A stretch of DNA of 64,000 nt from Podarcis bocagei. Its lineage: Eukaryota. The position numbers and the translations under genes were made by a program. Location: the NCBI GenBank assembly GCA_964188305.1, contig OZ076904.1; one strand, 5' to 3'. Under the pieces are notes generated by a model. The model saw only the letters and a program-made list of their open reading frames with translations, ran no database searches and had not been told where the DNA came from. Below, piece after piece: positions 18,901 to 62,700 of the stretch (position 1 is its first letter; each line of letters starts with the position of its first letter).

Positions 18901-21900
18901 GAGATGATGAATGTCAGAGAGTCATTACAGTGGTACTTCAGGTTAAGAACTTAATTCGTTTTGGAGGTCTGTTCTTAACTTGAAACTTCTTAACCTGAGG
19001 TACCACTTTAGCTAATGGGGCCTTCCGCTGCCCCCGCACGATTTCTGTTCTCATCCTGAAGCAAAGTTCTTAACCCCAGGTACTATTTCTGGGTTACCAG
19101 AGTCTGTAACCTGCAGCATCTGTAACCTGAAGCATCTGTAACCCGAGGTACCACTGTACTTAGAGGAATTGACTCAATTTATTCTGACTAACAGGCTATG
19201 ATGATAGTAAATAATGTAATAACAGAAAAAATCAAAATAATGAAAGCAAAAAGACAGGGATATCCCCAGTCACCATTATTATTTTAGTTTTAGAGACCCT
19301 GGTCAGATGTAGAAGATCAGATGAAGAAATAAAAGGGATAACAGTAGGTTAAAGGTAAAGGTAAAGGGACCCCTGAACATTAGGTCCAGTCATGACCGAC
19401 TCTAGGGTTGTGGCGCTCATCTTGCTTTATTGGTCAAGGGAGCCAGCGTACAGCTTCCGGATCATGTGGCCATGACTAAGCTGCTTCTGGCGAACTAGAG
19501 CAGCGCACGGAAAAGCCGTTTACCTTCCCGCCAGAGTGGTACCTATTTATCTACTTGCACTTTGACGTGCTTTCGAACTGCTAGGTTGGCAGGAGCAGGG
19601 ACTGAGCAATGGGAGCTCACCCCGCCGTGGGGATTTGAACCGCCGACCTTCCGATCGGCAAGTCCTAGGCTCTGTCGATTAACCCACAGCGCCACCCGCG
19701 TCCAAACAGTAGGTTACAAAGCATATGAACTCAAGGCCTTTGCAGATGACTATGTGGTAACTGTAGAAGACCCCATGGCTAGCCAACCAAGGGTCTTGAA
19801 CAGATTCTCAAGTTGGAGAAGTAGCAGGTTTTAAACTAAATAAAGGTAGAACGAAAGTATTGGTGGAAAATGTGACAGAAGTGATGATTGAGAAGAAAGT
19901 TTAATATTTAGGAGTATGGATAACAGATACGAACATAAATATTTTTAAGAATAAGTATACAGGAATTGGAAATAAATGAAAAAAAGCTTAAATAAAAAAC
20001 ATATATAAAATAGAGATATCTGGAGGGTGGCAGCACGACAACAGGACTTTTCTGTGGTGGCTCCTCGCTTGGGGGATGTTCTCCCAGAGAGGCTCCCTGG
20101 ACACCTTTGTGACAAATCTTTAGGTGCCAGGCGAGAAAGTTATTCTGTAACCAGGATTTGGGTGGATAAAACCATCTCTGGGCATTTTAATGTGCTTTTG
20201 GTTTGCTTGTTTTCTTTCTTTCATTTGCTTTTTCTGTTCTCATTTTGTATTTTTATTCTGCAAACCACCCTCTGATCTTCAGATGAAAGTTGATATATAA
20301 ACAGAATAATACTAATATTATTACTACAGACCCTCCAAAGGTCAAAATGGCACCCAGTTGAGAGGTGCTGGAGCTGAGTTCCAGCGAGTTCCCCCTGAAG
20401 AAAGCCCTGGGTATAAATAGTAAAATGATCTTTATGGGATGGGACATCCCTATTTTCACCGGAGACATGTTGGAAGGTCAGCTACTATTACTAATACTAA
20501 CTATGATATTTTACATGTCTATCCCCAGTCAAGATCAGCATCTGTGTGGACTGCAGTTTGCAAAAGGGGGAAGGAAATACCTGCCACGGCTGTAGCCTTT
20601 GGGGTCCCCATTGCTCTCCTTCCTCCACCATCAGCCTCCTCTGGGATCTCGATGAAAGCGAAGCATGCAAGGCCTGAGCCACAGCCTGAACATTGATGTA
20701 AGTGCTATAGCTATCTAGAGACAGGATTGTCTCACAAACCCTTTGGGACACCATCTCCATTTCCTCCTCCTCTTTGCATCTTCTCCGGCCTTTCACAGAC
20801 AACAGATGCTTTGAATATGAACACTGATAAGCTTCATCCAAAAAATCTCCAAGAAGATTGGACTGCGATTTATATTTCTCACCTTTGCTGCTCCTTATTC
20901 CAGTCTGAATTTCAAAGGACAGAGAACCATGGAGGTGCTGGAATATATTTGGAGGGAAGTAAAAGCCAATTCTGATTTCTAGCAAAGCTGTTGTGATCCA
21001 GACTTTCGCGCCTATTTCCTTCTCATAGATATTGTTTATTGCCATGAGTATTATGATAACATGTGCATTGGTTATATAGGAAAGAAATACCCCAACTTGT
21101 CTCCATAGGAAAAATGGTTCCCCAGGTGTTATAAATTCATCAAAATAACTTTCTGGTACTCTTTTTGATAAAGCAATGCAGATCCCTTTGCTGAGCATCA
21201 GAGGTTTCACAGCGCTCACAAATCTTTCTCCACTGTCATTGTCTGGAGTGAAGAGGCCAATCCACGTCCATCCAAAATGCAGGAGCAATTCAACAATCCC
21301 CTGGTACTGACTTTCCTCTTTGGGACTCATCCGGTAGACAAAAGGGAACAGGGTTTTACCTTCGAGAAACTGGACAGTAAAACCATGACTGATCTAGCAA
21401 GGAAAGCAAAAGACCAGCAATTTACTTTAATTTCAGCATAACAGATATTTAATTATCTGTAATGACTGATATCGAAATCTCTGCTGGCTGACGCTGATGG
21501 GAGTTTTAGTCTGAAACATCTGGAGGTGACAAGATGGTGAAGGCTCAGTTTTGAAAAAGGGATGTAGGATCCATAGCTCAGGATTTCCCCATTTTTAAAA
21601 ATATCCCTACTTGACCCCTCCAAAGAGAAAATAGAATCTTATGGAGTTGAAATTCTTTGTCCCTCCATGCTCTCCCACTAGTTAGTTACCTGTGGGATTT
21701 TATAGATGCCTGACAAGGCTGAAATCACTCTTGAGATGACAGTATTGCCTCTTTCAAGAACAGCCAGCAGGGGATTCTGTTCTCCACAGTGATAATTGGG
21801 AATATTGCATCCACTGCCTGCAAGCAGCTCTAGCATGGCGTCCGAAGTCATCCCTGCATCTAAATAGTTCTCATAGATGTTGTAGCCCAGGGTGATGTTG

Positions 21901-23363
21901 GGTAAGATCCTGAGATCCTGGTTGATCTCTTGGATGGTGAACAGGAAAGACAACATGTACCAGTCAAACCTAGTTGACTTCCTGCAATAAATGAATCCTT
22001 TAAAAAGAGTGAAACTGATATTCATATTAATGGGAGGAAGGAAACATTANNNNNNNNNNNNNNNNNNNNNNNNNNNNNNNNNNNNNNNNNNNNNNNNNNN
22101 NNNNNNNNNNNNNNNNNNNNNNNNNNNNNNNNNNNNNNNNNNNNNNNNNNNNNNNNNNNNNNNNNNNNNNNNNNNNNNNNNNNNNNCCTTTTCCTGTCTA
22201 GCATTGAACAAAATTTTGGAGACCTCTGCTCCATGACAGGAACTTTGATGCAAACAGCACACAGAGCTGTTCAACAGTGGAACAGACTCCCTCCGAAGGT
22301 GACCATGTGTCATGGATGCTTCAGGTGTGATACCTCCGGGTCCCTTCCATCTCTACAACTCTGTGATTCTATTCTACTGTGGTTCTATGAGTAAGCAATG
22401 AAGGTGCCCCTCAACATTTGAGATATACTGGGAAGCTGCTCCCTAGGTTGCTTTTGCTGCAGTGGTCTTTGTCGCCTTCCAAGGTGCTAGACTACAGGTA
22501 GATAACAGACAATTTTATTGAAGGAGGGGAAGCACCAAATACCCCAGTCCCCTTTGACTTGGAAATGAGGCCTGTTGGCTTTCAGGTTTGAGTGTGTGGT
22601 AAAATTTATAATTTTGCTCATATTTTTCATCGCTGACTCCACCAGTGAGGACACCCCCTGGTCTGTATTATTTTATATAATTATTTTATTTGAAGCATAT
22701 CATTCCATGTGCAAAACTGTAGCATTCCTTAATGACAGTTTATGAATTGTCCAAAGGGAATAATATTGAATAAAACCTTTGAGCCTTGGAAATTCACTGA
22801 GTTTCATGGCATCCTGCAGGTGGGGAAATTCAGTGCATCCTTTTGAACCCCTACCAGATTTCTTGCATTCTTCTAAAAGCAACACAGAGGAATAGGCACA
22901 GGATTGTTTTACTTAGGAAGACAGAGGGAATAAGGAAATTGGAGAGGTTTGTGTGGAATCTTCTCCTGGACCCCCCAGCTCCCATCAGCCCAGGCCAGCA
23001 AGACCAATGGTCAGGACAGGGCAGTCCTGCAACATCAGCCCTTGGCTCCCCAGCCCTGAGATAGGGGCTCTTTCCTATCACAACCATTACAAGGACTGGA
23101 GGACCGTGAAACCCATCCGCATATGATTTTACATACACTTCCTTCCTGATGAAGGGTGTCTGAGTAAAGCTGTATGGAGTTCTCTCAAGAAGGCGTTTTG
23201 GAGAGATGATCCCACTGATGAGGAAATGTCCCGGCCGGTAGTAATTGCGAGCATCCGTTTCATCCCTGACCAGATTCAAGGGGCATTTTGCCTTGTGGTT
23301 CCCGCAGACTCCAAAGGGCATCATGAGCAGCAGAAGCAGCAACAGAAGGAGCAGGGATCTCAT
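15047..23363 (-). CDS. V2R-B: complete vomeronasal type-2 receptor, 861 aa (exons 23137-23363, 21690-21981, 20581-21393, 18194-18421, 16536-16662, 15047-15945)
   Basis: Exon lengths 227+292+813+228+127+899=2586, frame-consistent and all GT-AG; signal peptide, Venus flytrap, Cys-rich domain, class C 7TM ([31 protein letters not shown]). Confidence 0.93.
16536..16662 (-). CDS. V2R-B exon 5 (Cys-rich domain)
   Basis: [15 protein letters not shown]...[15 protein letters not shown], 127 nt. Confidence 0.92.
16723..17173. mobile_element. Non-autonomous hAT transposon (451 bp) in V2R-B intron 4
   Basis: TIRs cagcggcgtagcgtg / cacgctacaccactg; perfect 8-bp TSD TGGGTATG; absent from C, D and E. Confidence 0.88.
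18194..18421 (-). CDS. V2R-B exon 4
   Basis: [14 protein letters not shown]...EWNKKFNK, 228 nt. Confidence 0.92.
18928..19156. mobile_element. Tc1/mariner (Tigger-like) MITE nested in L1; also 31025-31221 and 61213-61427
   Basis: TA + cagtggtac...gtaccactg + TA. Confidence 0.85.
19352..19703 (-). mobile_element. Sauria SINE, full length, nested in L1
   Basis: tRNA-like head, (ACCTTT)n tail, 12-bp TSD AACAGTAGGTTA. Confidence 0.88.
20581..21393 (-). CDS. V2R-B exon 3 (Venus flytrap core)
   Basis: ISHGF...[32 protein letters not shown]...LQPWQ, 813 nt. Confidence 0.95.
21690..21981 (-). CDS. V2R-B exon 2
   Basis: 292 nt, V2R motifs. Confidence 0.93.
22050..22186. other. Assembly gap (137 N) in V2R-B intron 1
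   Basis: Run of N. Confidence 0.99.
23137..23363 (-). CDS. V2R-B exon 1
   Basis: MRS(L)10MMPFGVCG signal peptide, 227 nt. Confidence 0.88.
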
Positions 23364-26299: not shown

Positions 26300-26790
26300 G
26301 GATGCTGGCTTAACCTTCAAAGCCCTATAGGGCCTAGGTCCCTCGTATCTACGGGGCCGCCTCTCCTGGTATGTCCCATGGAGGACCTTATGGTCTTCAA
26401 GCAAAAACATCTTGGAGGTCCCGGGCCACAGGGAGGTTAGGCTGGCCTCAACCAGAGCCAGGGCTTTTTCGGCTGTGGCCCCGATCTGGTGGAACGCTCT
26501 GTCCCAAGAGACTAGGGCCCTGCGGGACTTGACATCTTTCCGCAGGACCTGCAAGACGGAGCTGTTCAGCCAGGGCACAGTCGGACCCCCTCCTTTGGTC
26601 ATCCCCGCAGAACTGTAGCCCAATGGTTGCCATTAATTTGATTTTGAATTGATTTTAGAATGAATTGATTTTAGAATTCTGTGTTACTTTTATTGTTAGC
26701 CGCTCTTAGCCTAGGGGAGGGCAGGATATAAATAAAATCATCTTCTTCTTCTTCTTCTTCTTCTTCTTCTTCTTCTTCTTCTTCTTCTTC
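26300..26790 (+). mobile_element. L2-clade LINE 3' end with (TTC)n tail; duplicate at about 38260-38740
   Basis: RARAFSAVAPIWWNALS...FRRTCKTELF motif, 3'UTR, microsatellite tail. Confidence 0.75.
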
Positions 26791-27611
26791 CCCACATTGT
26801 TTAACATCTACATGAAGCCACTGGGTGTGGTTATCCGGAGGTTTGGAGTATGTTATCAGAATTATGCTGACAACACTCCGCTCTATTTCTCCTTCACATC
26901 TGCAGGGGAGGCAGTGGAAGTGCTGGACTTCCTTGGTCTTGTCTTGGTAATGGATTTCAAGTGGGGTTTAGGCCTGGTTTTGGCACAGAAACTGCTTTGG
27001 TCGTCCAGTATGGTGACCTCTGTTGAGAGAGAGAAACATATCCCTGATAATTCTTCTCAACGTCTCACCGGCTTTCAGTACCATTGAGCGAGGGGTGGGT
27101 GGCAGCGTTTGCGGTGGTTCCAGTCCTACTTGGATGGTCATTTCCAGACAGTGTTACTTGGGGAATGTTTTTCAGCTCCGGGAGCCTTGAATGTGGGGTT
27201 CCACAGGGCTGAATCCTATGCCCGCATTGTTTAACATCTACATAAAACCGCTTTTCAGTCAAGGCTTGGCTAAGGTCAGCTGCTACTCTTTGGAACAGGG
27301 AGCAGAGCTTAAGCGATACAGAAATTAAACCAACAGACTACAGAAGATAACTTAAATTAATTTCTCAGTTTATTGATATACAAAACTTAGGAGAACGAAA
27401 TGACATGAAGTGCACCTGTAAATGACACAGCATACAAAAGATTTCCACCCATCTTACTCTTCATGTCAACAGGACTACACAAAACCTGGGCTAAAAAGGA
27501 ACATAATCTCTTTCAGACGTGGAGAAGGAAGAACATGGATGAGCAGGTGTGTTTCCTTTATGTACTTCTGGAGATAGGGAACATGGAATATTTTAAGAAT
27601 CATATGTCCCC

Positions 27612-31500: not shown

Positions 31501-34500
31501 CCAATTTATCTACTTGTACTTTGACGTGCTTTCGAACTGCTAGGTTGGCAGGAGCAGGAACTGAGCAACGGGAGCTCACCCCATCGCGGAGATTTGAACC
31601 GCAGACCTTCTGAGTCCTAGGCTGTGTGGTTTAACCCACAGCGCCACCCGTGTCCCAACAGTAGTTTACAAAGCATATAAACTCAAGGCCTTTGCAGATG
31701 ACTATGTGGTAACTGTAGAAGACCCCATGGCTAGTAAACCAAGGGTCTTGAACAGATTCTCAAGTTGGAGAAGTAGCAGGTTTTAAACTAAATAAAGGTA
31801 GAACGAAAGTATTGGTGGAAAATGTGACAGAACTGATGATTGAGAAGAAAGTTTAATATTTAGGAGTATGGATAACAGCTACAAACATAAATATTTTTAA
31901 GAATAACTATACAGGAGCTTGGAAAGAAACGAGAAAAAAAATTAAATAAAAATGTATATAAAAAATAGAGATTTCTGGAGGGTGGCAGCACGACAACAGG
32001 ACTTTTCTGTGGTGGCTCCTCGCTTGGGGGATGTTCTCCCAGATAGGCTCCCTGGACACCTTTGTGACAAATCTTTAGGTGCCAGGCGAGAAAGTTATTC
32101 TGTAACCAGGATTTGGGTGGATAAAATCATCTCAGGGCATTTTAATGTGCTTTTGGCTTGCTTGTTTTCTTTCTTTCGTTTGCTTTTTCTATTCTCATTT
32201 TGTATTTTTATTCTGCAAACCACCCTCTGATCTTCAGATGAAAGTTGATATATAAACAGAATAATACTAATATTATTACTACAGACCCTCCAAAGGTCAA
32301 AATGGCACCCAGTTGAGAGGTGCTGGAGATGAGTTCCAGCGGGTTCCCTCTGAAGAAAGCCCTGGGTATAAATAGCAAAATGATCGTTATGGGATGGGAC
32401 ATCCCTATTTTCATCGGAGACATGTTGGAAGGTAAGCTACTATTACTAATAGTAACTATGATATTTTACAGGTTTATCCCCAGTCAAGATCAGCATCTGT
32501 GTGGACTGCAGTTTGCAAAAGGGGGAAGGAAATACCTGCCACGGCTGTAGCCTTTGGGGTCCCCATTGCTCTCCTTCCTCCACCATCAGCCTCCTCTGGG
32601 ATCTCGATGAGAGCGAAGCATGCAAGGCCTGAGCCACAGCCTGAACATGGATGTAAGTGCCATAGTTGTCTAGACACAGGATTCTCTCATACTCCCCTTG
32701 GGGCAATGGCTGCAGTTTCTCCTCCTCTCTGCATCTTATCCTGCCTATCACGGACAACAGATGCTTTGAATATGAACACTGAAATGCTTGATAGAAATAA
32801 TCCGTAATATTGATCTGCAATCTATATTTGTCACCTTTGCTGCTCCTTATTCCAGTCTGAATTTCAAAGAACAGAGAACCATGGAGGTGCTGGAATAGAT
32901 ATGGAGGGATTAAAAAGCCAATTCTGTATTCTACCAAAGCTGCTGTGATCCAGACTTTTGCCCCTATTTCCTTCTCATAGATATAGTGTACTGACATGAA
33001 TAACATGATATCCAGTGCAGTGGTTATATAGGAAAGAAATACCCCAACTTGTCTCCATAGGAAAAAAGGTTCCCCGGGCCTGATAAATTGATTTATATCA
33101 TTTTCTGGTACTCTTTTTGATAAAGCAATGCAGATCCCTTTGCTGAGCATCAGAGGTTTCACAGCGCTCACAAATCTTTCTCCACTGTCATTGTCTGGAG
33201 TGAAGAGGCCAATCCACGTCCATCCAAAATACAGGAGCAATTCAATAATCCCCTGGTACTCACTTTCCTCTTTGGGACTCATCCGGTAGACAAAAGGGAA
33301 CAGGGTTTTACCTTCGAGAATCTGGGCAGTGAAGCCATGACTGATCTAGCAAGGAAAGCAAAAGACCAGCAATTTACTTTAATTTCAGCATAACAGATAT
33401 TTAATTATCTGTAATGACTGATATCGAAATCTCTGCTGGCTGAGGCCGATGGGAGTTTTAGTCCGAAACATCTGGAGGTGTCAAGTTGGTGAAGGCTCAG
33501 TTTTGAAAAAGGGATGTAGGATCCATAGCTCAGGATTTCCCCATTTTTAAAAATATGCCTACTTGACCCCTCCAAAGAGAAAATAGAATCTTATGGAGTT
33601 GAAATTCTTTGTCCCTCCATGCTCTCCCACTAGTTAGTTACCTGTGGGATTTTGTAGATGCCTGACAAGGCTGAAATCACTTTTGAGATGACAGTATTGC
33701 TTCTTTCAAGAACAGCCAGCAGGGGATTCTGTTCTCCACAGTGATAATTGGGAATATTGCATCCACTGCCTGCAAGCAGCTCTAGCATGGCGTCCGAAGT
33801 CATCCCTGCATCTAAATAGTTCTCATAGATGTTGTAGCCCAGGGTGATGTTGGGTAAGATCCTGAGATCCTGGTTGATCTCTTGGATGGTGAACAGGAAA
33901 GACAACATGTACCAGTCAAACCTAGTTGACTTCCTGCAATAAATGAATCCTTTAAAAAGAGTGAAACTGATATTCATATTAATGGGAGGAAGGAAACATT
34001 ATATGATCCACAACGCTTAGATTTATTTGTTTATTTATTTATTTATTTATTTATCCATCCATCCATCCATCCATCCATCCATCCATCCATCCTTTTGCAT
34101 TAATATCAACCCTTTTCCTGTCTAGCATTGAACAAAATTTTGGAGACCTCTGCTCCATGACAGGAACTTTGATGCAAACAGCACACAGAGCTGTTCAGCA
34201 GTGGAACAGACTCCCTCCGAAGGTGACCATGTGTCATGGATGCTTCAGGTGTGATACCTCCGGGTCCCTTCCATCTCTACAACTCTATGATTCTATTCTA
34301 CTGTGGTTCTATGAGTAAGCAATGAAGGTGCCCCTCAACATTTGAGATATACTGGGAAGCTGCTCCATAGGTTGCTTTTGCTGCAGTGGTCCTTGGCGTC
34401 TTCCAAGGTGCTAGACTACAGGTAGATAACAGACAATTTTATTGAAGGAGGGGAAGCACCAAATACCTCAGTCCCCTTTGACTTGGAAATGAGGCCTGTT

Positions 34501-38027: not shown

Positions 38028-38085
<58 letters not shown>
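38028..38085. repeat. (AAT)n microsatellite
   Basis: Direct observation; shorter interrupted paralog at about 26098-26130. Confidence 0.95.
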
Positions 38086-38086
<1 letters not shown>

Positions 38087-40497: not shown

Positions 40498-43400
40498 CTG
40501 GGGAAGAGAAAAAGAGTGGCTGCAGCATCACTTACATCCCTAATGATCTGTGCTCTATTACGTTTTGAAGAAATCCTAGAGATTTCTTCCTTGTGATCAT
40601 TCCTTTCAACTCTCTTCCGGGATGTAATGAAGGTGATTAATCCTAAAGAAATTGAGGAAGGTGCCACATTCCACAATGTCTGCAGAATTCTCACAAAAAG
40701 TGTGTGAGACTGGATTTCTGGCCTGTGTTTACTCTCTCTAGGAATACCTTCCCCCTTGGAGTCACCCACCTTCCTGGGCGGAGAAGGTCCCTTCTGCACA
40801 CTGAGCACAAGCATAGCAGCAAATGGGCTGTCCTTCTAGAACCACCTTGGCATATCCAGGTCGACATCTTTCTGTACACCTGGAACGAGGCACGGCCTAA
40901 CCAGAAAGACAAGAAGGTGCAAGAAAGAGGAACAGTTAGGAATATTTGTGGGTATGTAATTCAGTCATAGGGACGCGGCTGGCGCTTTGGGTTAAACCAC
41001 AGAGCCTAGGACTTGCCGATCAGAAGGTCGGTGGTTCGAATCCCCGTGACGGGCTGAACTGCCATTGCTCAGTCCCTGCTCCTGCCAACCTAGCAGTTCG
41101 AAAGCAAGTCAAAGTGCAAGTAGATACATAGGTACCGTTCCAGCGGGAAGGTAAACAGCATTTCCGTGCGCTGTTCTGGTTCGCCAGAAGCGGCTTAGTC
41201 CTGCTGCCCACATGACCCAGAAGCTGTACGCAGGTTCCCTCAGCCAATAAAGCGAGATGAGCACCGCAACCCCAGAGTCGGACACGACTGGACCTAATGG
41301 TCAGGGGTCCCGTTACCTTTACCTTAATTTACACATAGAGTGATTTCAAACAGATCTCTGGTCTGCAGCCTTTCAAAATTTCAAAAATAAATTGCTTTCC
41401 ATCCTTCTGCATGTATGAAAACCCAATTGTTCACTTTTACTAGGTGTTTTCCCTTTTCTTCTACGTAGTCCATTCGGTTAAACATTCTGTCCAGAATTCT
41501 TAAATTCTCAGTCTGGTTTGGAAATAGATAGTGTCTTTTCTAAGGACCTCTTGGCTCTATCCTTTCTTTGAGCACCCCAAATCCCCCTCCTATCTCAGCT
41601 GCTGTGGAAAGAAGGAGTGGCGGTTGCAGCTGTTATTGGACGGTCAAGACATCATTGATCAACCTGATATAGTCATTTTGCAGCAGTTGTTCAAGGAAAA
41701 ATATATTCAGGATCTCCTGGCCTCCCCTCTCTGTGATTCCCCTTACCTTGTTGAATTTCTTGGGCCACTCAATAGCTTCTGGGTTAATGGTGAACTTTAT
41801 GCTAGCAGACGTCTCTCTCCTTATATTCCCAATTTTCACAATGACATGAGACTTATTGGGAGACATCACCCAGTTCATAATATCGAAGTCTCCTGGCAGC
41901 TCCCAGTTCTCATCCAAGCACAGCCTGCCTCTGGAAGTATTCAGACACTGGATTTCTCTTAAGAAAGAGTGAAGCTGGAAGGACAGAAGAAAGCACCAGC
42001 ACTGAGAAACCTTGAAGCCAAGATGGATATCTCAGTCCTACTCACTTCAACCTCTTATGATTTGGGGCCTGCGTGTATCTCATGTAGACTGGAATTCCTA
42101 TTCAGCCATTTCTATTACTACAGACCATGCAAGTAAGTAAGTAAGTAAGTAATCTTTATTTGCTTCAGCCATCGGCCATAGCAATAAAACAACAATATGA
42201 TATACAAAGAATAGAAATAAAAAGTCAATTATATAAAATACATTTTAGGGTTTTGAATCAGTAGTCAAATAGTGGATCTTATTCCAGCGCCAAGAATTTA
42301 AAATGCGGATGTATATAAAGCATAAAATGGCCCCAAAAATAGGCTCGGCACATTGGGTTAAAAAGTAATAAAAGAATTTAAAACAGGTCCAGGTCTAGGA
42401 CACACTACCCAGTCAGAGTAGCCCTGAGTTTCAGAGCCTGCACAATAAAGATTGCCACCCCACGTGAAATTTGGGGATTTGCGTCCACAAGAAGCGATTT
42501 CAAACAGTCTTCCTTAGATGTAATATTGGTGGATGTGGAATTATCCAACCCACAAGCTGTCCAATCCTATATCAGGAATTTTTAAATGTTTAATATTTTA
42601 GTATGAATTTCTTTATTTTGGGAGCTGCCCAGAGTGAGGAGGCAACTGAAGTAGATGTATAAGCAGTGCTATTTTTCTAGAAAAGAAGGTGCCGGAACTC
42701 ACCATGAACACCTCCTTCTTACATTGGCAATGGCACCCACCTGAAAGGTGTCAAAACTGAGTTCCAGCGAGTTCCCCTCTGAAAAAAAGCCCTGGGTATA
42801 AGCAGTAAAGGACGCAGGTGGCGCTGTGGGTTAAACCACAGAGCCTAGGACTTGCTGATCAGAAGGTTGGCGGTTCGAAGCTGTATGCCGGCTCCCTCGG
42901 CCAATAAAGCGAGATGAGCGCCACAACCCCAGAGTCGGCAACGACTGGACCTAATGGTCAGGGGTCTCTTTTCCTTTATAAGCAGTAACATTATCGTTAT
43001 GGAATGGGCCGTCTCTATTTTCAACAGAGTTGAATACCAATGTTGGGCGGTATGCTACTATTGCTAATACTAATAGTAACTATGATATTTTGCAGGTTTA
43101 TCCACAGTCAAGATCAGCATCTGTGTGGACTGCAGTTTGCAAAAAGGGGGAAGGAAATACCTGCCACGGATGTAGCCTTGCGTGTCCCCATTGCTCTCCT
43201 TCCTCCACCATCAGCCTCCTCTTGGATCTAGATGAAAGCGAAGCATGCAAGGCCTGAGCCACAGCCTGAACATTGATGTAAGTGCCATAGCTGTCTAGAA
43301 ACAGGACTCTCTCAGGCTCCCATTGGGATAATGGCTCCAGTTTCTCCTCCTCTTTGCATCTTATCCTGCCTTTCACGGACAACAAATGCTTTGAATATGT

Positions 43401-46400
43401 ACACTGAAACGCTTCATCCAAAGAATCCACAAGATTGGACGGTGATTTATAGTTGTCACCTTTGCTGCTCCTTATTCCGGTCTGAATTGCAAAGGACAGA
43501 GAACCATGGAGGTACTGGAAGTCATTTGTAGGGATGTAATAGCCAGTTCCGACTTCTAGCAAAGCTGTTGTGATCCAGACTTTTGCCCCTATTTCCTTCT
43601 CATAGACTATGTTTATTGCCAGGAGTAGCATGATGCCCATTGCATTGGTTACATAGTAAAAAAATACCCCAACTTGTCTCCATAGGAAAAAAGGTTCCCC
43701 AGGCCTGATAAATTGATTTAGATCATTTTCTGGTACTCTTTTTGATAAAGCAATGCAGATCCCTTTGCTGAGCAGCAGAGGTTTCACAGCGCTCTCAAAT
43801 CTTTCTCCACTGTCATTGTCTGGAGTGCAGAGGCCAATCCACGTCCATCCAAAATACAGGAGCAATTCAACAATCCCCTGGTACTGACTTTCCTCTTTGG
43901 GACTCATTCGGTAGACAAAAGGGAACAGGGTTTTACCTTCGAGAACCTGGGCAGTGAAGCCATAACTGATCTAGCAAGGGAAGCAAAAGATCAGCAATTT
44001 ATTTTACTTTCATCATAACGGGTATTTAAACATATGAAATGACTGATATCTAAATCTCTGCTGGCTGAGCCTGATGGGAGTTTTAGTCTGAAACATCTGG
44101 AGGTGACAAGTTGGTGAAGGCTCAGTTTTGAAAAAGGGATGTTGGACCATAGCTCAGGATTTTCCCATTTTTAAAAATATCCCCACTTGACCTCTCCAGA
44201 AAGAAAGTAGAATTTTATGCAGTTGAAATTCTCTATGCTTCCATGCTCTCCCAATACTTACCTGTGGGATTTTGTAGATGTCTGACAAGGCTGAAATCAC
44301 TCTTGAGATGACAGTGTTGCCTCTTTCAAGAACAGCCAGCAGGTGATTCTGTTCTCCACAGTGATAATTGGGAATATTGCATCCACTGCCTGCAAGCAGC
44401 TCTAGCATGGCGTCCGAAGTCATCTTTGCATCTAAATAGTTCTCATAGAGGTTGTAGCCCAGGGTGATGTTGGGTAAGAGCCTGAGATCCTGGTTGATCT
44501 CTTGGATGGTCAGCGGGAAAGACAACATGTACGAATAGAGCCTAGTTGACTCCCTGCAACAAATGAATCCTTTTAAAAGAGTGAAACTGATATTCATATG
44601 ATGGGGGGGGGGGACATTATATGATCCAAAAAGATTAGTATTTATTGATTAATCCTATTGCATTAATATCAAACCATTTACAGTCTAGTATAGAATAAAA
44701 ATAAATAGAATAAAGACATGCTGGCCACATGACCCGGAAGCTGTACGCCGGCTCCCTCGGCCAATAAAGCGAGATGAACGCCGCAACCCCAGAGTCGGCC
44801 ACGACTGGACCTAATGGTCAGGGGTCCCTTTACCTTTACCTATAGAATACAAATTTGCAGATCTCTGCTCCACGACCGGAGCTTTGATGCAAACAGCACA
44901 CAGAGCTGTTCAACAGTGGAACAGACTCCCTCCGAAGGTGACCATGTGTCATGGTCTAAGAGCCTGAGATCCTGGTTGATCTCTTGGATGGTGAACAGGA
45001 AAGACAACATGTACCCGTAGAACATAATTGCCCTCCTGCAATAAATGAATTATTTAAAAAGAGTGAAACTGATATTCATATTAATGGGAGGGAGGAAACA
45101 TTATATGATCCACAAAGATTAATATTTATTTATCATTTTACATTAATATCAAACCTTTTCCTGTCTAGCACAGAACAAAAATTTGGAAATCTCTGCTCCA
45201 TGACCGGAGCTTTGATGCAAACAGCACACAGAGCTGTTCAACAGTGGAACAGACTCCCTCTGAAGGTGACCATGTGTCATGGATGCTTCAGGTGAGATTC
45301 CTCTGGGTTCCTTCCATCTCTACAACTCCATGATTCTATTCTACTGTGGTTCTATGAGTAAGAAATGAAGGGGCCCCTCAAAATGTGTGCTATACTGGGA
45401 AGTTGCTGCAAAGCCTGCTTTTCCTGCATTGGCCTTTGAATTCTTCCAATGGGCTAGACTATAGGTAGATAAGAGACAATTTTATTGAAGGAGGGGAAGC
45501 ACCAAATACCTCAGTCCCCTTTTATTTTATTTTTTTAAAGTAATATTTATTAAAGTTTTACAGACATTAGAAAATTTCAAAGTTTAAACTCAAAAAATAA
45601 AGACAGAGAATAACCCTAATATGATAAAAAGAGAATTACAAAAAACAAAAGCAAGTTATACATCTTTGACAAAATCTTAGTTTTGGGTTCTAACAGTTCT
45701 GTTTCCAACTTTGATTTTTCCACCTGGAAGCCAATTTTTTTGTCCAGATTGTATACTTCTCTTATTTGGTAATAATGAAACCAATCTCGCACTCTATCTT
45801 TTAGTTTCTCAAAACTCTGCAATTTCAATTTGTCTCCTTCTTGCTCCAAAATCTCCCAATATTTTGGCCATTTGGCCTCCATATCGGGCCTTTTCTGAGC
45901 CTTCGCCTCTATTGGTGACAACCACCTTGGGGTTTTATTTTCAAGTAATTCCTTATACCTTGTCCAAACATTAAACAGTGCTCTCCTGACAATATGGTTT
46001 TTAAATGCTTTATGAGCTTTAACCTTGCCGTACCACAAGTATGCGTGCCACCCAAAAACATTATTAAAACCTTCTAGATCCAGAATGTCAGTGTTCTCAA
46101 GAAGTAGCCAATCTTTCAACCAGCAGAAAGCTGCTGATTCATAGTAGAGTTTAAGGTCTGGCAGGGCAAACCCCCCTCTTTCTTTTACATCAGTTAATAT
46201 TTTAAATTTTATTCTGGGCTTTTTGCCCTGCCAGACAAATCTAGAGATGTCTCTCTGCCACTTCTTGAAACAATCCATCTTGTCTAAAATTTGTAATGAT
46301 TGGAACAAAAATTAACATTCTTGGCAGTACATTCATCCTTATAACCGCAATTCGGCCCAAAAAGGAAAGCTTCAGATTTGACCATATTTCTAAATCCTTT

Positions 46401-55815: not shown

Positions 55816-56566
55816 CCTGCAGCTGGATCCCACCATGGACTCTCCTTCCTTGGAGGTTTTTAAGCAGAGGTTGGATGGCCATCTCTAATGGATGCTTTAG
55901 TTGAGATTCCTGCATTGGACAGAGTTCCCCCAGGAGAAATGTTGGGGAGTAAGCTACTATTACTAAGACTAACAATGATATTTTACAGGTCTCTCCACAG
56001 TCGAAATCAGCATCTGCGTGGATTGCAGTTTTCAAAAAGGGGAAGGAAATACCTGCCATGGTCAGATCCAGCTCCTTCTTTGGTCTTTGTGAGTAAAGTT
56101 CAGGCCAAACTTCCAACTCTCCCAAACACACCCCTTGACTTCTGTCCAACATGTTTTTCTCCAGCTCTGCACCTGCTACTTGAGTCATTCAAGACTTCAG
56201 AAAGTTATTGTGGTGAAACTTATTCCACTTGGAATAATCAAAATTATAGTCATCTCATCTTCTGAAAGCTCAGGAGATATTTCTGGAGATTACATCAGCC
56301 TCAGAAAGTAGCATGACAATATTAATTGTGCTGTGTCTGGGAAAGAAAAAGTTAGTGCAGATAATATTTCCTGTGATGCAGACAGACTGAGTCAAGCTGC
56401 AGAGCTGGTGAAAGAGGGGTGCGCCTGCCTTGGGCTTCCTAGCTCTGAAGGTAGAGTTGAAAACCACCCAGATTGGGAAATCCCAGGCAGTCTGACCTTG
56501 CAAGAGTCTTTGGGTTCTTCTGCTTTGTGTCTTTGGCAGGTAAGAGGAGGAGGAGGCAGAGCCAGA

Positions 56567-56793
56567 ATGAGATCCCTGCTCCTTCTGTTGCTGCTTCTGC
56601 TGCTCATGATGCTCTTTGGAGTCTGCGGGAACCACAAGGCGAAATGCCCCTTGAATCTGGTCAGGGATCAAACGGATGCTCGCAATTACTACTGGCCTGG
56701 ACACTTTCTCATCAGTGGGATCATCTCGCCAAAACGTTTATATGAAGAAACTCCATACATCTTTTCTCAGACACCCTTCGCTAGGATTGAAAA
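56567..56793 (+). CDS. V2R-E exon 1
   Basis: Signal peptide; AA/gtatgt donor. Confidence 0.88.
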
Positions 56794-59700
56794 GTATGTA
56801 CCTCACAGTTTCATGGTCCTCCAGTCCTTCTAGAGGTTCCTATTTATCAAGGAAATAGCCCCTTTCTCAGGGCTGGGGAGCCAAGGGCTGATGTTGCTGT
56901 ACTACCCTGCCCTTAACCTTTGGGCTTGCTGGCTGGGGGTGATGGGAGCTGGGGGGGGGGTCCTAGTAAAAGATTCCACCCAACCCTCTCCTATTTCCAT
57001 GTTCTCTGGGTCTTCCTTAGGAAAACACTTTCCTACCTTTGATTCTGTGTTGCTTTTAGAAGAATGCAAGAATGTTAGTGAATCTGGTCAGGGTTCAAAA
57101 GGATGCACTGAATTTCCCCACCTGCAGGATGCCATGAAACTCAGGCAATTTCCAAGGCTCAAAGGTTTCATTCAATATTATTCCATTTGGACAATTTAGA
57201 AACTGTCGTTAAGGAATGTTACAGTTTTACAAATGGAATTTTAAGATCCTCTAGGTGACTTTTGGTGGCTGAAGAGCAGGAAAGATGTACTTTAATTGGA
57301 ATGATGAATAAAATAATATGAATCAGGAGACTTCCTTGTTCGTGGAGTCAGGTCTCTAAAATATGAAGAGGAATTATTCCTTTTTTCACATACACAACTG
57401 GCCTCATTTCTAAGTAGTGAGATGTTTGATATTTCTTCACTTGGAATCCATAGGTACCTGTTTCCTATCCCAGAGGGAGGCATGAAACTCAAGCAATTTC
57501 CAAGATGCCAAAATTATTTTATCTTTATTCTATTTGGATCATTTGTGAACAACCTTAGCACAGTTCTCTTAACACAATACCACAGGAGACCTACAGCCCA
57601 CCATGGGCTACATTAAAGGTTTCCTCCTCCAATCTCAGCACTTTTTCCTTTCTGTCACTGCTTTTTAAAAAAAATAAAATAGAAGCGTTTTAAGAAACTC
57701 TTGAAAATGGGTGGATTTTTATGGGTGAAAGCAGGAACGATATGCTTCAAATAAAATGGTTATATAAAATAACCAGGGGGTGTCCTCACTGGTGGAGTCA
57801 GTGATCCAAACATGGGCAAAATTATAATTTTACCACACACTCAAACCTGAAAGCCACCAGGCCTCATTTGTAACTAAAAGGGGACTGAGGTATTTGGTGC
57901 TTCCCCTCCTTCAATAAAATTGTCTCTTATCTACCTATAGTCTAGCCCCTTGGAAGAAGTCAAAGACCAATGCAGGAAAAGCAGGCTTTGCAGCAACTTC
58001 CCAGTATATCACACATTTTGAGGGGCGTCTTCATTTTTTACTCATAGAATCACAGTAGAAAAGAATCATAGAGTTGTAGAGATGGAAGGAACCCAGAGGA
58101 ATCTCACCTGAAGCATCCATGACACATGGTCAACTTCGGAGGGAGTCTGTTCCACTGTTGAACAGCTCTGTGTGCTGTTTGCATCAAAGCTCCGGTCATG
58201 GAGCAGAGGACTCCAAATATTTGTTCTATGCTAGACAGGAAAAGGTTTGATATTAATGTAAAAGGATAAATAAATACTAATCTTTGTGAATCATATAATA
58301 TTCCCTCCCTTCCAATCATATGAATATCAGTTTCACTCTTTTTAAAGGATTCATTTATTGCAGGGAGGCAGCTAGGTTCTCCCGGTACATGTTGTCTTTC
58401 CTGTTCACCATCCAAGAGATCAACCAGGATCTCAGGCTCTTACCCAACATCACCCTGGGCTACAACATCTATGAGAACTATTTCGATGCAAGGATGACTT
58501 CAGACGCCATGCTAGAGCTGCTTGCAGGCAGTGGATGCAATATTCCCAATTATCACTGTGGAGAACAGAATCCCCTGCTGGCTGTTCTTGAAAGAGGCAG
58601 TACTGTCATCTCAAAAGTGATTTCAGCCTTGTCAGGCATCTACAAAACCCCACAGGTAAGTAGTGGGAGAGCATGGAAGCATAGAGAATTTCAACTGCAT
58701 AAAATTCTACTTTCTTTCTGGAGAGGTCAAGTGGGGATATTTTTAAAAATGGGAAAATCCTGAGCTATGGATCCAACATCCCTTTTTCAAAACTGAGCCT
58801 TCACCAACTTGTCACCTCCAGATGTTTCAGACTAAAACTCCCATCAGCGTCAGCCAGCAGAGATTTAGATGTCAGTCATTTCAGATAATTAAATATCTGT
58901 TATGCTGAAAGTAAAATAAATTGCTGATCTTTTGCTTTCCTTCCTAGATGAGTTATGGCTTCACTGCCCAGGTTCTCGAAGGTAAAACCCTGTTCCCTTT
59001 TGTCTACCGGATGATTCCCAAAGAGGAAAGTCAGTACCAGGGGATTGTTGAATTGCTCCTGCATTTTGGATGGACGTGGATTGGCCTCTGCACTCCAGAC
59101 AGTGACAGTGGAGAAAGATTTGAGAGCGCTGTGAAACCTCTGATGCTCAGCAAAGGGATCTGCATTGCTTTATCAAAAAGAGTACCAGAAAGTTATTTTG
59201 ATGAATTTATAACACCTGGGGAACCATTTTTCCTATGGAGACAAATTGGGGTATTTGTTTCCTATATAACCAATGCACATGTTATCATAATACTCATGGC
59301 AATAAACCATATCTATGAGAAGGAAATAGGAGCGAAAGTCTGGATCACAACAGCTTTGCTAGAAATCAGAATTGGCTTTTTCCTCCCTCCAAATCTATTC
59401 CAGCACCTCCATGGTTCTCTGTCCTTTGCAATTCAGACTGGAATAAGGAGCAGCAAAGGTGACAAATATAAATTGCAGACCAATCTTGGGGATTATTTCA
59501 ATCAAGCATTTCAGTGTTCATATTCAAAGCACCTGTTGTCCGTGAAAGGCAGAATAAGATGCAGAGAGGAGGAGAAACTGCAGCCATTGCCCCAAGAGGA
59601 GCGTGAGAGAGTCCTGTCTTATGACAGCTATGGCACTTACATCAATGTTCAGGCTGTGGCTCAGGCCTTGCATGCTTCGCTTTCATCTAGATCCCAGAGG

Positions 59701-62700
59701 AGGCTGATGGTGGAGGAAGGAGAGCAATGGGGACCCCAAAGGCTACAGCCGTGGCAGGTATTTCCTTCCCCCTTTTGCAAACTGCAGTCCACACAGATGC
59801 TGATCTTGACTGGGGATAAACCTGTAAAATATCATAGTTACTATTAGTAATAGTAGCTTACCTTCCAACATGTCTCCGATGAAAATAGGGATGTCCCATC
59901 CCATAACGATCATTTTGCGATTTATACCCAGGGCTTTCTTCAGGGGGAACCAGCTGGAACTCAGCTCCAGCACCTCTCAACTGGGTGCCATTTTGACCTT
60001 TGGAGGGTCTGTAGTGATAATATTAGTATTATTCTGTTTATATATCAACTTTCATCTGAAGATTACAGGGTGGTTTGCAGAATAAAAATACAAAATGAGA
60101 ATAGAAAAAGCAAACGAAAGAAAGAAAACAAGCAAACGAAAAGCACATTAAAATGCCCAGAGATGGTTTTATCCACCCAAATCCTGGTTACAGAATAACT
60201 TTCTCGCCTGGCACCTAAAGATTTGTCACAAAGGTGTCTAGGGAGCCTCTCTGGGAGAACATCCCCCAAGCAAGGCGCCACCACAGAAAAGTCCTGTTGT
60301 CGTGCTGCCACCCTCCAGATATCTCTATTTTTTTTACATAGATTTTATTTGTTTTTTTTTCCATTTCTTTCCAAGCGCCTGTATAGTTATTCTTAAAAAT
60401 ATTTATGTTTGTAGCTGTTATCCATACTCCTAAATATTAAACTTTCTTCTCAATCATCAGTTCCATTTTTTGTCTTTTTTATATTGCTCTGTCACATTTT
60501 AAACCAATACTTTCGTTCTACCTTTATTTAGTTTAAAACCTGCTACTTCTCCAACTTGAGAATCTGTTCAAGACCCTTGGTTGGCTAGCCATGGGGTCTT
60601 CTACAATTACCACATGGTCATCTGCAAATGCCTTGAGTTTATATGCTTTGTAACCTAATGTTGGGAGATGGGTGGCGCTGTGGGTTAAACCAGAGAGCCT
60701 ACGACTTGCAGATCAGAAGGTCGGCGGTTCAAATCCCCGCGACGGGGTGAGCTCCCATTGCTCGGTCCCTGCTTCTGCCAACCTAGCAGTTCGAAAGCAC
60801 GTCCAAGTCCAAGTAGATAAATAGGTACCGCTCCGGCGGGAAGGTAAACGGCGTTTCCGTGCGCTGCTCTGGTTCGCCAGAAGAGGCTTAGTCCTGCTGG
60901 CCACATGACCTGGAAGCTGTACGCCGGCTCCCTTGGCCAATAAAGCGATATGAGCGCCGCAACCCCAGAGTTGGCCGCGACTGGACCTAATGGTCAGGGG
61001 TCCCTTTACCTTTACCTTTAACCTATGTTATCCCTTTTATTTCTTCATCTGATCTTCTACTTCTGGCCAGGGTCTCTAAAACTAAAATAATAATGGTGAC
61101 TGAGGATATCCCTGTCTTGTCCCTTTCATTATTTTGAATTTTTCTGTTATTACGTTGTTTACTATCATCATAGCCTGTTAGTCAGAATAAATTGTGTCAA
61201 TTCCTCTAAGTACAGTGGTACCTCGGGTTACAGACGCTTCAGGTTACAGACTCTGGCAACCCAGAAATAGTACCTGGGGTTAAGAACTTTGCTTCAGGAT
61301 GAGAACAGAAATCGCGCAGCGGCAGCGTAAGGCCCCATTAGCTAAAGTGGTACCTCAGGTTAAGAACAGTGTCAGGTTAAGAATGGACCTCCAGAACAAT
61401 TTAAGTTCTTAACCTGAGGTACCACTGTAATGACTCTCTGAATTTCATCATCTCTATAGTCTTCTTCGTAGAAGTCCATGAAAAAATGGTCAAAGGCCTT
61501 CTCTGCATCTATAAAAATTAGCACTGCTTGCTTATCATTTCTAACCTCCAGATATTCTATCAATTATATACCTTATATTCTCCTTCATCTGGCGGCCTGG
61601 CAAAAAACCAGCCTGGTCCTGATGAATTAAATCCATTGATAGCACTTTCATGTCGTTTGCCAATAGGTCTGCAAACAGTTTATAGTCATTATTTAATAGA
61701 GAAATCAGCCTATCATTTTTTACTGATAACAGATCTGTATCTTTTTTTCAGAATCAGCGTAATGTAAGTATCTTAAATCTTTTAGTGGTTGTGCCAAATA
61801 ATCTTGTAATTTCTTATAGTACTTTGCTGATAGCCCCCCTGGCCCTGGTGTTTTCCCCATTTTGGCTTGATTAATTGCCTGTTGTAGCTTCCCAGTTTCT
61901 TAATGCTGGCGCTTTCCCCTGCCATTCCAGCTTCACCCTTTCTTGAGAGAAATCCGGTGTCTGAATACTTCCAGGGGCAGGCTGTGCTTGGATGAGAACT
62001 GGGAGCTGCCAGCGGACTTCAATATTATGAACTGGGCGATCTATCCCAATAAGTCTCGTGCCCTTGTGAAAATTGGGAATATAAGGAGAGGAGCATCTGC
62101 TGGCATAAAGTTCACCATTAACCCAGAAGCCATTGAGTGGAACAGGAAATTCAATAAGGTAGGGGGGATAATTGGGGGAGGGGGCTAGGAGATCCTGATT
62201 GTGCTGTTCCTTGAACAACCACAGCAGAATGACCATGTCAGGTTGACTGTCCAGTAACAGCTGGAACCAGCACGCCTTCTTTCTACAGCAGCTGAGATAG
62301 GAGGGGAATTTGGGATGCTCAAATAAAGGATATTGACCTTTCATACATGCAGAAGGATGAAAAGTAATTTATTTTACAAATGATAATTACTGATTTATTG
62401 TATATTTTTTAAATTTGTGAGTAAGCTCACTTGTATTAAATTTGTCTCAATTTGTGGTTGATGTGGTGAAAATCAATTAAGGCAATTTGGCAAAAAAACA
62501 ACCAAAACCCAACTCTCCTTTCAGTTGGGCATTGAACAGCAAAGCGCTTTCTCTCTCTCTCTCTGACACACACAAACACGAGAATGAACCGTGTGTGAGA
62601 TTATTCGAATCCTGAAATTTGGGGGAATCACATGTCAGACCCATTGTCATTTGCTTAGAAGTTCTTTTAAGAAGGGAAACAGGTAAATGGAGAAGAGGAA

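What the first reader, a model, noticed from the sequence alone, without database searches (positions are those of the whole stretch)
20581..59757. Combinatorial shuffling of hypervariable segments in the V2R ligand-binding exon
Seen in exon 3 of B, C, D and E: near-invariant framework blocks ([55 protein letters not shown]) alternate with hypervariable segments whose sharing pattern switches. FTPD..RFVS versus CTPD..RFES groups BC|[10 protein letters not shown] versus ND(I/L)NQFIR groups BE|CD, and [13 protein letters not shown] is shared by B and E. KS(Q/P)SNL..LDEA..CKEEE versus (R/K)[21 protein letters not shown] groups BD|CE. All three possible splits of four genes occur within 810 nt, which a simple duplication tree cannot produce. 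Meanwhile the 7TM exons and B/C exon 2 are nearly identical. Inference: short-tract gene conversion or unequal crossover anchored in conserved frameworks generates new receptor specificities cassette-wise, like MHC or Ig-CDR diversification but in the germline chemosensory repertoire.
Basis: partly seen in the sequence, partly recalled or inferred. Interest (0 to 1): 0.72.

Follow-up and report, generated by a model that had tools for sequence, protein, structure and literature searches.

The report
Gene-conversion patchwork in lizard pheromone receptors
Four neighbouring pheromone-receptor (V2R) genes of a wall-lizard-like genome have swapped short stretches of their ligand-binding exon by gene conversion while selection keeps those stretches diverse, a real but already familiar way for smell-receptor families to evolve.

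Summary
The window holds a tandem array of intact six-exon V2R genes from a lacertid lizard (B, C, D on the minus strand, E on the plus strand). In their 810/813-nt exon 3, the 32 informative sites fall into blocks: BC|DE, then BE|CD, then BD|CE, then BC|DE (permutation P<=1e-5).

Synonymous and non-coding sites follow the same mosaic.

The firm event is a ~236-nt patch shared by B and E (global P=0.0004). A weaker C-E patch follows it. E is a hybrid: D-like on the 5' side and B/C-like on the 3' side.

Sixteen exon-3 copies from four lacertid species show the same thing. PHI gives P=0.0005, and adjacent segments reject each other's trees. Variable segments have omega ~1.7, frameworks ~0.6.

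The "cassette shuffling" reading is only partly supported:
- Patchy ancestry is also significant in the introns.
- The segments vary continuously and are not discrete modules.
- Segment types never form more combinations than a tree allows.

The assembly gap lies in a microsatellite in intron 1 of B and is irrelevant. Public reads could not bridge the junctions. Mosaic receptors made by gene conversion are long known for olfactory receptors, so this is a new member of a known kind.

The parts
20581..21393 (-). Gene B exon 3 (813 nt, open, Venus-flytrap ligand-binding region)
   Evidence: Alignment and splice-site context; Pfam ANF_receptor E=2e-14
32536..33345 (-). Gene C exon 3 (810 nt)
   Evidence: Private changes are 23 non-synonymous against 2 synonymous
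43161..43970 (-). Gene D exon 3 (810 nt). The same arrangement of segments occurs in Podarcis lilfordi, P. raffonei and P. muralis
   Evidence: The flanking DNA is 95-97% identical to P. lilfordi locus L005
58948..59757 (+). Gene E exon 3 (810 nt), the most mosaic copy: D-like, then B-like, then C-like
   Evidence: It has only 4 non-synonymous and 3 synonymous private changes
20963..21198 (-). B copy of the B-E gene-conversion tract (exon nt 196-431; encodes SYFDEFIT ... [13 protein letters not shown])
   Evidence: 42 polymorphic sites with 4 mismatches, global permutation P=0.0004. pS(B-E)=0.020 against 0.14 for the other pairs. The B+E clade has 97% bootstrap in this segment
59143..59378 (+). 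E copy of the B-E gene-conversion tract
   Evidence: Same evidence as the B copy. In the B/C/E three-way comparison, C is the odd one out at 23 of 30 variable sites here
59423..59950 (+). Zone where E is closest to C (the core perfect run is E 59555-59596 = C 32697-32738). It continues into the start of intron 3
   Evidence: Core run global P=0.04. B is the odd one out at 35 of 60 variable sites. pS(C-E)=0.051 against 0.168 for B-E. C and E are 100% identical across the exon 3 end and the intron 3 start
55970..59100 (+). 5' half of gene E (promoter, exons 1-2, introns 1-2, first ~150 nt of exon 3), which belongs to the D lineage
   Evidence: Upstream of exon 3, 125 sites support BC|DE, against 2 and 4 for the other two splits
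22050..22186 (.). Assembly gap, inside the microsatellite of intron 1 of gene B
   Evidence: The flanks are collinear with C 34001-34111. The gap was not filled
15047..15961 (-). Gene B exon 6 (7TM; the upper limit is the tblastn limit, and the acceptor is near 15945). The C copy is at 27612-28526 and the D copy at 39599-40513
   Evidence: Pfam 7tm_3 E~1e-83. dS 0.03-0.06 between copies. D's homology to B/C starts only ~60 nt upstream of this exon
21684..21980 (-). Gene B exon 2 (the C copy is at 33636-33932), nearly identical between B and C
16100..20400 (-). Introns 3-5 with exons 4-5 of gene B (the same block is in C and E). It comes from a more divergent V2R lineage than the rest of the gene
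   Evidence: The exon 4 region is 83-87% identical to every Podarcis/Lacerta copy, whereas D's is 89-97%. D's introns 3-5 cannot be aligned to it

Best explanation
The window is part of a tandem array of family-C vomeronasal receptor (V2R, 'Vmn2r26-like') genes of a lacertid lizard. The paralogs are 90-98% identical, lie 12 kb apart in direct and inverted orientation, and exchange sequence by ectopic (interlocus) recombination.

Short non-crossover gene-conversion patches of ~40-250 nt overwrite parts of exon 3 and of the introns. Larger exchanges have produced hybrid genes: E has a D-type 5' half and a B/C-type 3' half, and B/C/E carry an exon 4 block from a more distant lineage.

On top of this, diversifying selection acts on the segments of the Venus-flytrap domain that follow the beta-strand ends. 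As a result these segments stay variable while the frameworks, the introns near exons and the 7TM exon stay alike. Together the two processes give an exon in which neighbouring blocks have different nearest relatives.

Shown here: the mosaic, its silent-site support, the tracts, the incongruent segment trees and the excess of non-synonymous change. Inferred: that conversion creates functionally new receptors, and that the variable segments line the ligand cleft.
For: - Informative sites are clustered, P<=1e-5.
- B-E tract global P=0.0004 and C-E tract P=0.04.
- Synonymous distances follow the mosaic, and silent sites give Fisher P=1.3e-6.
- The whole-unit alignment shows BC|DE at 125 of 131 informative sites upstream of exon 3, while B, C and E are alike downstream.
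- B and E are in inverted orientation, so a short internal shared patch must be a conversion.
- With 16 intact exon-3 copies from four lacertid species, PHI P=0.0005. The same holds within 6 P. muralis paralogs from an independent assembly.
- AU tests: segment nt 196-435 rejects the tree of nt 436-690 (p=3e-7), and the reverse test gives p=0.002.
- Patchiness is also present in the introns.
- Omega is ~1.74 in the variable segments against 0.56 in the frameworks. Segments c and d are individually significant. Sliding pN/pS reaches 4-6.
- Gene identity: Pfam ANF_receptor, NCD3G and 7tm_3. The AF2 model of the D orthologue matches the CaSR ectodomain at TM 0.65.
Against: - Only four genes come from the genome itself. 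The donors of B's very divergent 3' part of exon 3 and of the SYFDEFIT segment were not found.
- PHI on third positions alone is not significant (27 sites, low power).
- The BD|CE block has no synonymous support.
- Public reads could not confirm that each mosaic is physically continuous.
- dS between 7TM exons (0.03-0.06) is lower than intron divergence, but not so much lower that purifying selection plus recent duplication is excluded.
Confidence: 0.8

Rival explanations
1. Cassette-wise combinatorial diversification. Discrete hypervariable modules, bounded by invariant frameworks that act as recombination anchors, are repeatedly reassorted among V2R paralogs. Selection favours the new combinations, as in the MHC peptide-binding region.
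For: - Variable segments alternate with invariant blocks and have omega >1.
- Podarcis copies carry other combinations. Examples are FTPD+RFES, CTPD+RFVS, and a KLQ..DYFNQAF segment joined to [12 protein letters not shown].
- Recombination inside the exon is significant across 16 copies.
- Segments a-d each begin at the C-terminal end of a beta strand in the model.
Against: - Mosaicism is just as significant in introns and in the 5' flank.
- The segments are multi-state and mostly unique, not reused modules.
- At 80% identity, no pair of segments shows more type combinations than a tree allows, and no cycles were seen.
- The F/C and V/E sites are single-nucleotide changes that could recur.
- Breakpoints necessarily map to invariant stretches, so 'anchoring' is not evidence.
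Confidence: 0.13
2. There was no recombination. The shared motifs arose by parallel amino-acid substitution under similar selection in different paralogs.
For: All 8 BD|CE sites are non-synonymous. Positive selection is evident.
Against: - The B-E tract shares synonymous changes and is 98% identical, against ~79% to the other copies.
- Silent-site distances switch partner.
- The adjacent introns show the same hybrid structure.
Confidence: 0.03
3. Assembly or polishing artefact. Reads from near-identical paralogs were mixed, creating chimeric exon 3 sequences.
For: - The array consists of 12-kb units that are 92-98% alike, and the scaffold has a gap in gene B.
- The available reads (short Logan unitigs and 1% of a Hi-C run) did not bridge any junction.
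Against: - D's full arrangement recurs in three other species' assemblies.
- Independent P. muralis paralogs show the same recombination signal.
- The B-E patch lies in the most divergent part of the exon, where mis-mapping is least likely. B and E still differ at 4 sites within it.
- Unitigs carrying the [15 protein letters not shown] sequence exist in other samples.
Confidence: 0.04

Closest known systems
Diversification of olfactory-receptor clusters by gene conversion (Sharon et al. 1999, as summarised in the review PMC1995454, which extends the principle to TAAR, V1R and V2R families)
   Same: Tandem arrays of recent paralogs. Ectopic conversion and recombination produce mosaic receptor sequences. 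Hypervariable residues lie in the putative ligand-binding parts.
   Different: Those cases concern single-exon class-A receptors. Here the exchange is inside one exon of a six-exon class-C receptor and extends into the introns. The species group (lacertid lizards) and the V2R ligand-binding exon have not, to my knowledge, been analysed this way.
GENECONV-detected conversion among fish OlfC (V2R-like) subfamily 9 genes (PMC6588630), and V1R conversion between mouse species (PMC2644715)
   Same: Same superfamily (OlfC/V2R) or the same organ system. Conversion was detected statistically among recently expanded paralogs.
   Different: In those papers conversion is treated as a homogenising nuisance, and converted genes were removed before the selection tests. 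Here the patches sit in the variable ligand-binding segments together with omega >1.
MHC class I/II peptide-binding-region micro-recombination / interlocus gene conversion (from general knowledge)
   Same: Short tracts move between paralogs or alleles in an exon under diversifying selection, giving patchwork sequences with conserved frameworks.
   Different: In the MHC, discrete motifs are demonstrably reused in many combinations and are maintained by balancing selection within populations. Here reuse of discrete cassettes was tested and not found, and no population data exist.
Squamate V2R expansion (Brykczynska et al. 2013, PMC3590772)
   Same: The same gene family and clade. That paper raises homogenisation by gene conversion as a possibility that 'could be investigated' with GENECONV.
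   Different: That study did not test it. The present window supplies a positive test for one lacertid cluster.

Membership tests
V2R / family-C GPCR (vomeronasal type-2 receptor) | Venus-flytrap (ANF_receptor) domain, then the nine-cysteine domain (NCD3G), then 7tm_3 | tested here: met
   Pfam hits on exons taken one by one: exon 3 ANF_receptor (E 1e-13 to 1e-15), exon 5 NCD3G (9e-15), exon 6 7tm_3 (~1e-83)
V2R / family-C GPCR (vomeronasal type-2 receptor) | Six-exon gene with a large (~810 nt) third exon, all exons open | tested here: met
   tblastn of the P. raffonei full-length protein P0246 finds six collinear stop-free exons in B, C and D, and exons 1-6 (the last cut by the window end) in E
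V2R / family-C GPCR (vomeronasal type-2 receptor) | Closest relatives are annotated V2Rs, and the fold matches solved family-C ectodomains | tested here: met
   The best hits are Podarcis, Lacerta and Zootoca 'vomeronasal type-2 receptor 26-like'. The AF2 model (pLDDT 72.7) matches the CaSR ectodomain at TM 0.65, E 4e-24
V2R / family-C GPCR (vomeronasal type-2 receptor) | Expression in vomeronasal sensory neurons | not tested
   No RNA run was examined.
Interlocus (ectopic) gene conversion | Spatial clustering of phylogenetically discordant sites beyond chance | tested here: met
   Runs test P<=1e-5; PHI P=0.0005; AU tests p=3e-7 and 0.002
Interlocus (ectopic) gene conversion | A tract of near-identity between two paralogs, flanked on both sides by sequence with a different nearest relative | tested here: met
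   B-E tract nt 196-431, global P=0.0004. On its 5' side E is D-like and B is C-like. On its 3' side E is C-like and B is unique
Interlocus (ectopic) gene conversion | The signal is carried by silent (synonymous or non-coding) sites, not only by selected residues | tested here: met
   pS(B-E)=0.020 against ~0.14 in the tract; pS(C-E)=0.051 against 0.168 in the next segment; Fisher P=1.3e-6. Caveat: PHI on third positions alone is not significant
Interlocus (ectopic) gene conversion | Physical continuity of each mosaic on single DNA molecules | tested here: inconclusive
   The Logan unitigs are 60-140 nt and only ~1% of a Hi-C run was read. No record bridges a junction
Cassette-type combinatorial diversification (MHC/Ig-like) | Discrete segment types reused in more combinations than a single tree permits | tested here: not met
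   With 16 copies and six segments, every pair of segments has no more combinations than (types_a + types_b - 1), and I saw no cycles on inspection
Cassette-type combinatorial diversification (MHC/Ig-like) | Exchange confined to, or enriched in, the variable exon relative to the flanking non-coding DNA | tested here: not met
   Patchy ancestry is also significant in introns 3-5 (P=0.0006) and in the 5' half (P=5e-5)

The most novel reading that the evidence does not exclude
In lacertid V2R arrays, ectopic gene conversion may act mainly as a generator of receptor diversity and not as a homogeniser. It would move cleft-facing segments of the Venus-flytrap domain between paralogs, with selection retaining the new combinations. 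A family of perhaps 10-25 near-identical-framework genes would then explore ligand space combinatorially, making it a germline chemosensory analogue of MHC peptide-binding-region evolution.
Probability: 0.2. Interest if true: 0.55.

Novelty: new member of a known kind. Interest (0 to 1): 0.4.

Why it matters
Squamates have expanded their V2R repertoire greatly, and how new specificities arise so quickly is poorly documented. This cluster is a clean, statistically supported example of paralogs exchanging parts of the ligand-binding exon while that exon is under diversifying selection.

It has three practical uses:
- It warns that V2R gene trees and site-model selection tests in squamates must allow for recombination.
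- It supplies natural chimeras (B, E and C differ by defined patches) that could be used to map which segments set ligand specificity.
- It answers, for one cluster, a question that the squamate V2R literature left open (PMC3590772).

Conceptually it extends a principle already established for olfactory receptors. It does not reveal a new mechanism.

Tried and rejected
1. Read support. One run search and one read-laying run gave only 60-140-nt unitigs and a thin sample of a Hi-C run. They show that the framework is covered ~25-30x while the variable parts are covered ~1x, and that contigs branch exactly at the framework/segment boundary (59191). They bridge no junction, so the chimera question stays open.
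2. PHI restricted to third positions or to purely synonymous codon columns had too few sites (27 and 6) and was not significant. I replaced it with synonymous distances per segment.
3. The perfect-run GENECONV-like score understated the B-E tract, so I reran it with mismatches allowed.
4. The first AF2 model, built from 23 sequences, was unusable (pLDDT 38). The second, from 81 sequences, was adequate.
5. The look-up of encoding contigs found nothing for P0246 and P0252.
6. The length window of the protein word search hid full-length V2Rs. I reached them through cluster members.
7. The type-level four-gamete analysis gave no support for cassette reuse.
8. I considered and rejected convergence, and considered unequal crossover as the sole mechanism. 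The latter is impossible for a short patch between inverted genes.
9. A joined (spliced) protein model of the window genes was not built or searched. Exons were searched one by one by reference.
10. Two Podarcis exon 3 copies that are split by multi-kb insertions were rejoined, but only inside the alignment script.
11. Earlier scan notes did not bear on this finding.
Full report
WHAT IS THERE

The window carries a tandem array of family-C vomeronasal receptor genes. Long ORFs and a tblastn map with a full-length Podarcis raffonei V2R (P0246) place genes as follows:
- B, C and D lie on the minus strand. Each has six collinear, stop-free exons.
- E lies on the plus strand, and its exon 6 is cut by the window end.
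- A is a 5' fragment (exons 1-2 only).
- A lone exon 4 relic sits between D and E.

Taken exon by exon, exon 3 is ANF_receptor, exon 5 is NCD3G and exon 6 is 7tm_3. The closest proteins are 'vomeronasal type-2 receptor 26-like' of Podarcis, Lacerta and Zootoca. Gene D with its flanks is 95-97% identical to a P. lilfordi locus. The genome is therefore a wall-lizard-like lacertid.

THE GAP

The N run 22050-22186 lies in intron 1 of gene B, inside a (GGAT)n(AAAT)n microsatellite about 70 nt upstream of the exon 2 acceptor. Both flanks align collinearly with gene C, which has 109 nt there. The gap affects no exon and none of the comparisons, and I did not fill it.

Exon 3 is 810 nt (813 in B), phase 0 and open in all four genes.

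At nucleotide level the 32 informative sites occur in blocks: BC|DE, then 13 consecutive BE|CD, then BD|CE, then BC|DE. There are 7 switches where 20.8 are expected (P<=1e-5), and a PHI-like statistic gives P=1e-4. Exon 2 of B and C, and the 7TM exons, are nearly identical as stated.

RECOMBINATION, NOT CONVERGENCE

They do not.
- In exon nt 196-432, pS(B-E) is 0.020 while every other pair involving B or E is ~0.14.
- In nt 433-690 the nearest silent-site neighbour of E becomes C (0.051, against 0.168 for B-E).
- The four silent informative sites in the B-E tract all say BE|CD, whereas 125 of 131 informative sites upstream of exon 3 say BC|DE (Fisher P=1.3e-6).

A GENECONV-like scan with permutation gives a B-E tract at exon nt 196-431. 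It has 42 polymorphic sites with 4 mismatches, global P=0.0004. It also gives a C-E core at nt 611-652 with P=0.04.

B and E are 38 kb apart and in inverted orientation. The shared stretch is an internal patch flanked on both sides by sequence with other affinities. That is the signature of non-crossover gene conversion, not of unequal crossover.

THE WIDER ANATOMY CHANGES THE PICTURE

Aligning the whole 8-9 kb units shows three things.
- From the promoter to the start of exon 3 there are two clear lineages, (B,C) and (D,E).
- Downstream of exon 3, B, C and E are alike, while D's introns 3-5 cannot be aligned to them.
- D's exon 4 block matches all Podarcis copies at 89-97%, whereas that of B/C/E matches them at only 83-87%. 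D's homology to B/C resumes just 60 nt before the 7TM exon.

E is thus a hybrid whose switch points lie inside exon 3. The B/C/E genes themselves carry a block from a more distant lineage.

In the B/C/E three-way comparison the odd one out changes in runs. It is E up to ~59100, C at 59143-59395 and B at 59423-59950. Similar runs continue through the introns. Clustering is significant in exon 3 (P=5e-5), in introns 3-5 (P=0.0006) and in the 5' half (P=5e-5). Patchy ancestry is therefore a property of the whole array and not of the ligand-binding exon alone.

MORE COPIES

Using cluster members of the protein hits, I fetched about 230 kb from the orthologous ~13-Mb chromosomes of P. raffonei, P. 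muralis, P. lilfordi and Lacerta agilis, plus a Logan contig. This brought the set to 16 intact exon 3 sequences.

Two of these are interrupted by multi-kb insertions. I rejoined them only inside the alignment script.

Results on the 16 copies:
- PHI is significant for all 16 (P=0.0005) and for the six P. muralis paralogs alone (P=0.0005), which come from an independent assembly.
- The segment tree for nt 196-435 puts B with E at 97% bootstrap. AU tests show that this segment rejects the tree of nt 436-690 (p=3e-7), and the reverse test gives p=0.002.
- D's complete arrangement recurs in P. lilfordi, P. raffonei and P. muralis, so it is old and not an artefact.

SELECTION

- Mean pN/pS over the exon is 1.22. 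Windows reach 4.0 (codons 46-60) and 6.0 (codons 136-150).
- Parsimony counts on segment-specific trees give omega ~1.74 for the six variable segments (368 non-synonymous, 55 synonymous changes) against 0.56 for the frameworks. The excess is significant in segments c (codons 102-123, P=0.001) and d (136-157, P=0.012).
- Gene C has 23 private non-synonymous changes against 2 synonymous. E has almost none of its own, as expected for a recent patchwork.
- Synonymous change per site is also higher in the variable segments (0.72 against 0.45). This fits older or imported sequence there and homogenised frameworks.

STRUCTURE

HMMER aligns exon 3 residue 2 with CaSR S166 and T1R3 S146. From my knowledge of family-C receptors, exon 3 then starts at the ligand-contacting SYA/SYG motif. 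Codon 54 corresponds to CaSR Y218, and segment d starts at the position of CaSR E297.

An AF2 model of the D orthologue (81-sequence alignment, pLDDT 72.7) matches the CaSR ectodomain (TM 0.65). In that model, segments a, b, c and d each begin at the C-terminal end of a beta strand and run into the next helix. In periplasmic-binding-protein folds that is the cleft-facing side. This is suggestive only, because I could not measure distances.

WHY 'CASSETTE SHUFFLING' IS ONLY PARTLY RIGHT

- Across 16 copies the segments are multi-state and mostly unique. SYFDEFIT, for example, occurs only in B and E.
- When segments are grouped into types at 80% identity, no pair of segments shows more combinations than a single tree allows.
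- The BD|CE block rests on 8 non-synonymous sites in a region where B and D differ by ~14%. It mostly reflects C-E similarity together with B's many private changes.
- Breakpoints can only be placed between variable sites, so their location 'in frameworks' carries no information.

Some Podarcis copies do show other pairings of motifs. Recurrent reassortment is therefore not excluded, but it is not demonstrated.

READS

The one run search found only low-coverage runs of several related organisms, plus Hi-C raw reads. Laid on E exon 3, they gave unitigs of 60-140 nt that bridge no junction.

Depth was about 25-30x in the framework bins and about 1x in the variable bins, for roughly 1.3x genome sampling. 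That suggests on the order of 10-25 copies sharing the frameworks at >=97%. Contigs branch exactly where the first variable segment begins, at 59191. The assembly-chimera alternative is therefore unlikely on indirect grounds, but it is not directly excluded.

COMPARISON WITH WHAT IS KNOWN

[quoted passage not shown] It cites the 1999 primate OR-cluster study (PMC1995454).

GENECONV hits are reported for fish OlfC genes (PMC6588630). The main squamate V2R study mentions conversion only as an untested possibility (PMC3590772).

The present case is therefore a new, well-supported member of a known kind: the first explicit test I am aware of for a squamate V2R cluster.

VERDICT

- Observation: confirmed.
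- Interpretation: partly supported. Gene conversion is shown, but a special cassette mechanism is not.
- Novelty: new member of a known kind.
- Interest: 0.4.

Noticed in passing
window 1023-3712 (-), and 258-891: Gene A is only a 5' fragment (exon 1 at 2901-3119, exon 2 at 1086-1388), 92.5% identical to the 5' half of E. Homology stops at 1023, where exon 3 should follow. In its place is a GC-rich stretch with overlapping ORFs on both strands.
   Followed up: partly
window 53314-53553 (-), within 52954-53665: A lone V2R exon 4 relic with a stop codon lies between D and E. It is 86-87% identical to the exon 4 regions of D and B, and sits next to a reverse-transcriptase ORF (50278-51456). It is probably the remnant of a destroyed array member.
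   Followed up: partly
window 44552-45022 (-): Gene D has a duplicated exon 2 acceptor and 5' part, separated by a ~480-nt insertion. The downstream copy gives an intact exon 2.
   Followed up: partly
window 4109-5174 and 13222-14301: Two copies (~90% identical) of a GC-rich tandem repeat whose ORFs read as Gly/Pro-rich units (…LAGAGPPGGPGREGGP…). They flank the region between genes A and B.
   Followed up: no
L007:10692-14790 (P. raffonei) and L005:6799-9748 (P. lilfordi): In two Podarcis genes, exon 3 is split by a 3-4 kb insertion, yet the two halves together still form an open 810-nt frame. These are recent insertional knock-outs of array members. The P. lilfordi one is the orthologue of gene D.
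   Followed up: partly
window 14870-27435 vs 27435-40560: The duplication unit of the array (~12.5-13 kb) runs from about 60 nt upstream of one gene's 7TM exon, through the intergenic DNA and the whole next gene. This suggests the array grew by unequal exchange anchored in the highly conserved 7TM exon.
   Followed up: partly
window 58964-59183 and 59624-59800 (reads of run X23): Hi-C reads of a related or identical species pile up ~25-30x on the framework parts of exon 3 but ~1x on the variable parts. This implies roughly 10-25 genomic copies with frameworks >=97% identical.
   Followed up: partly
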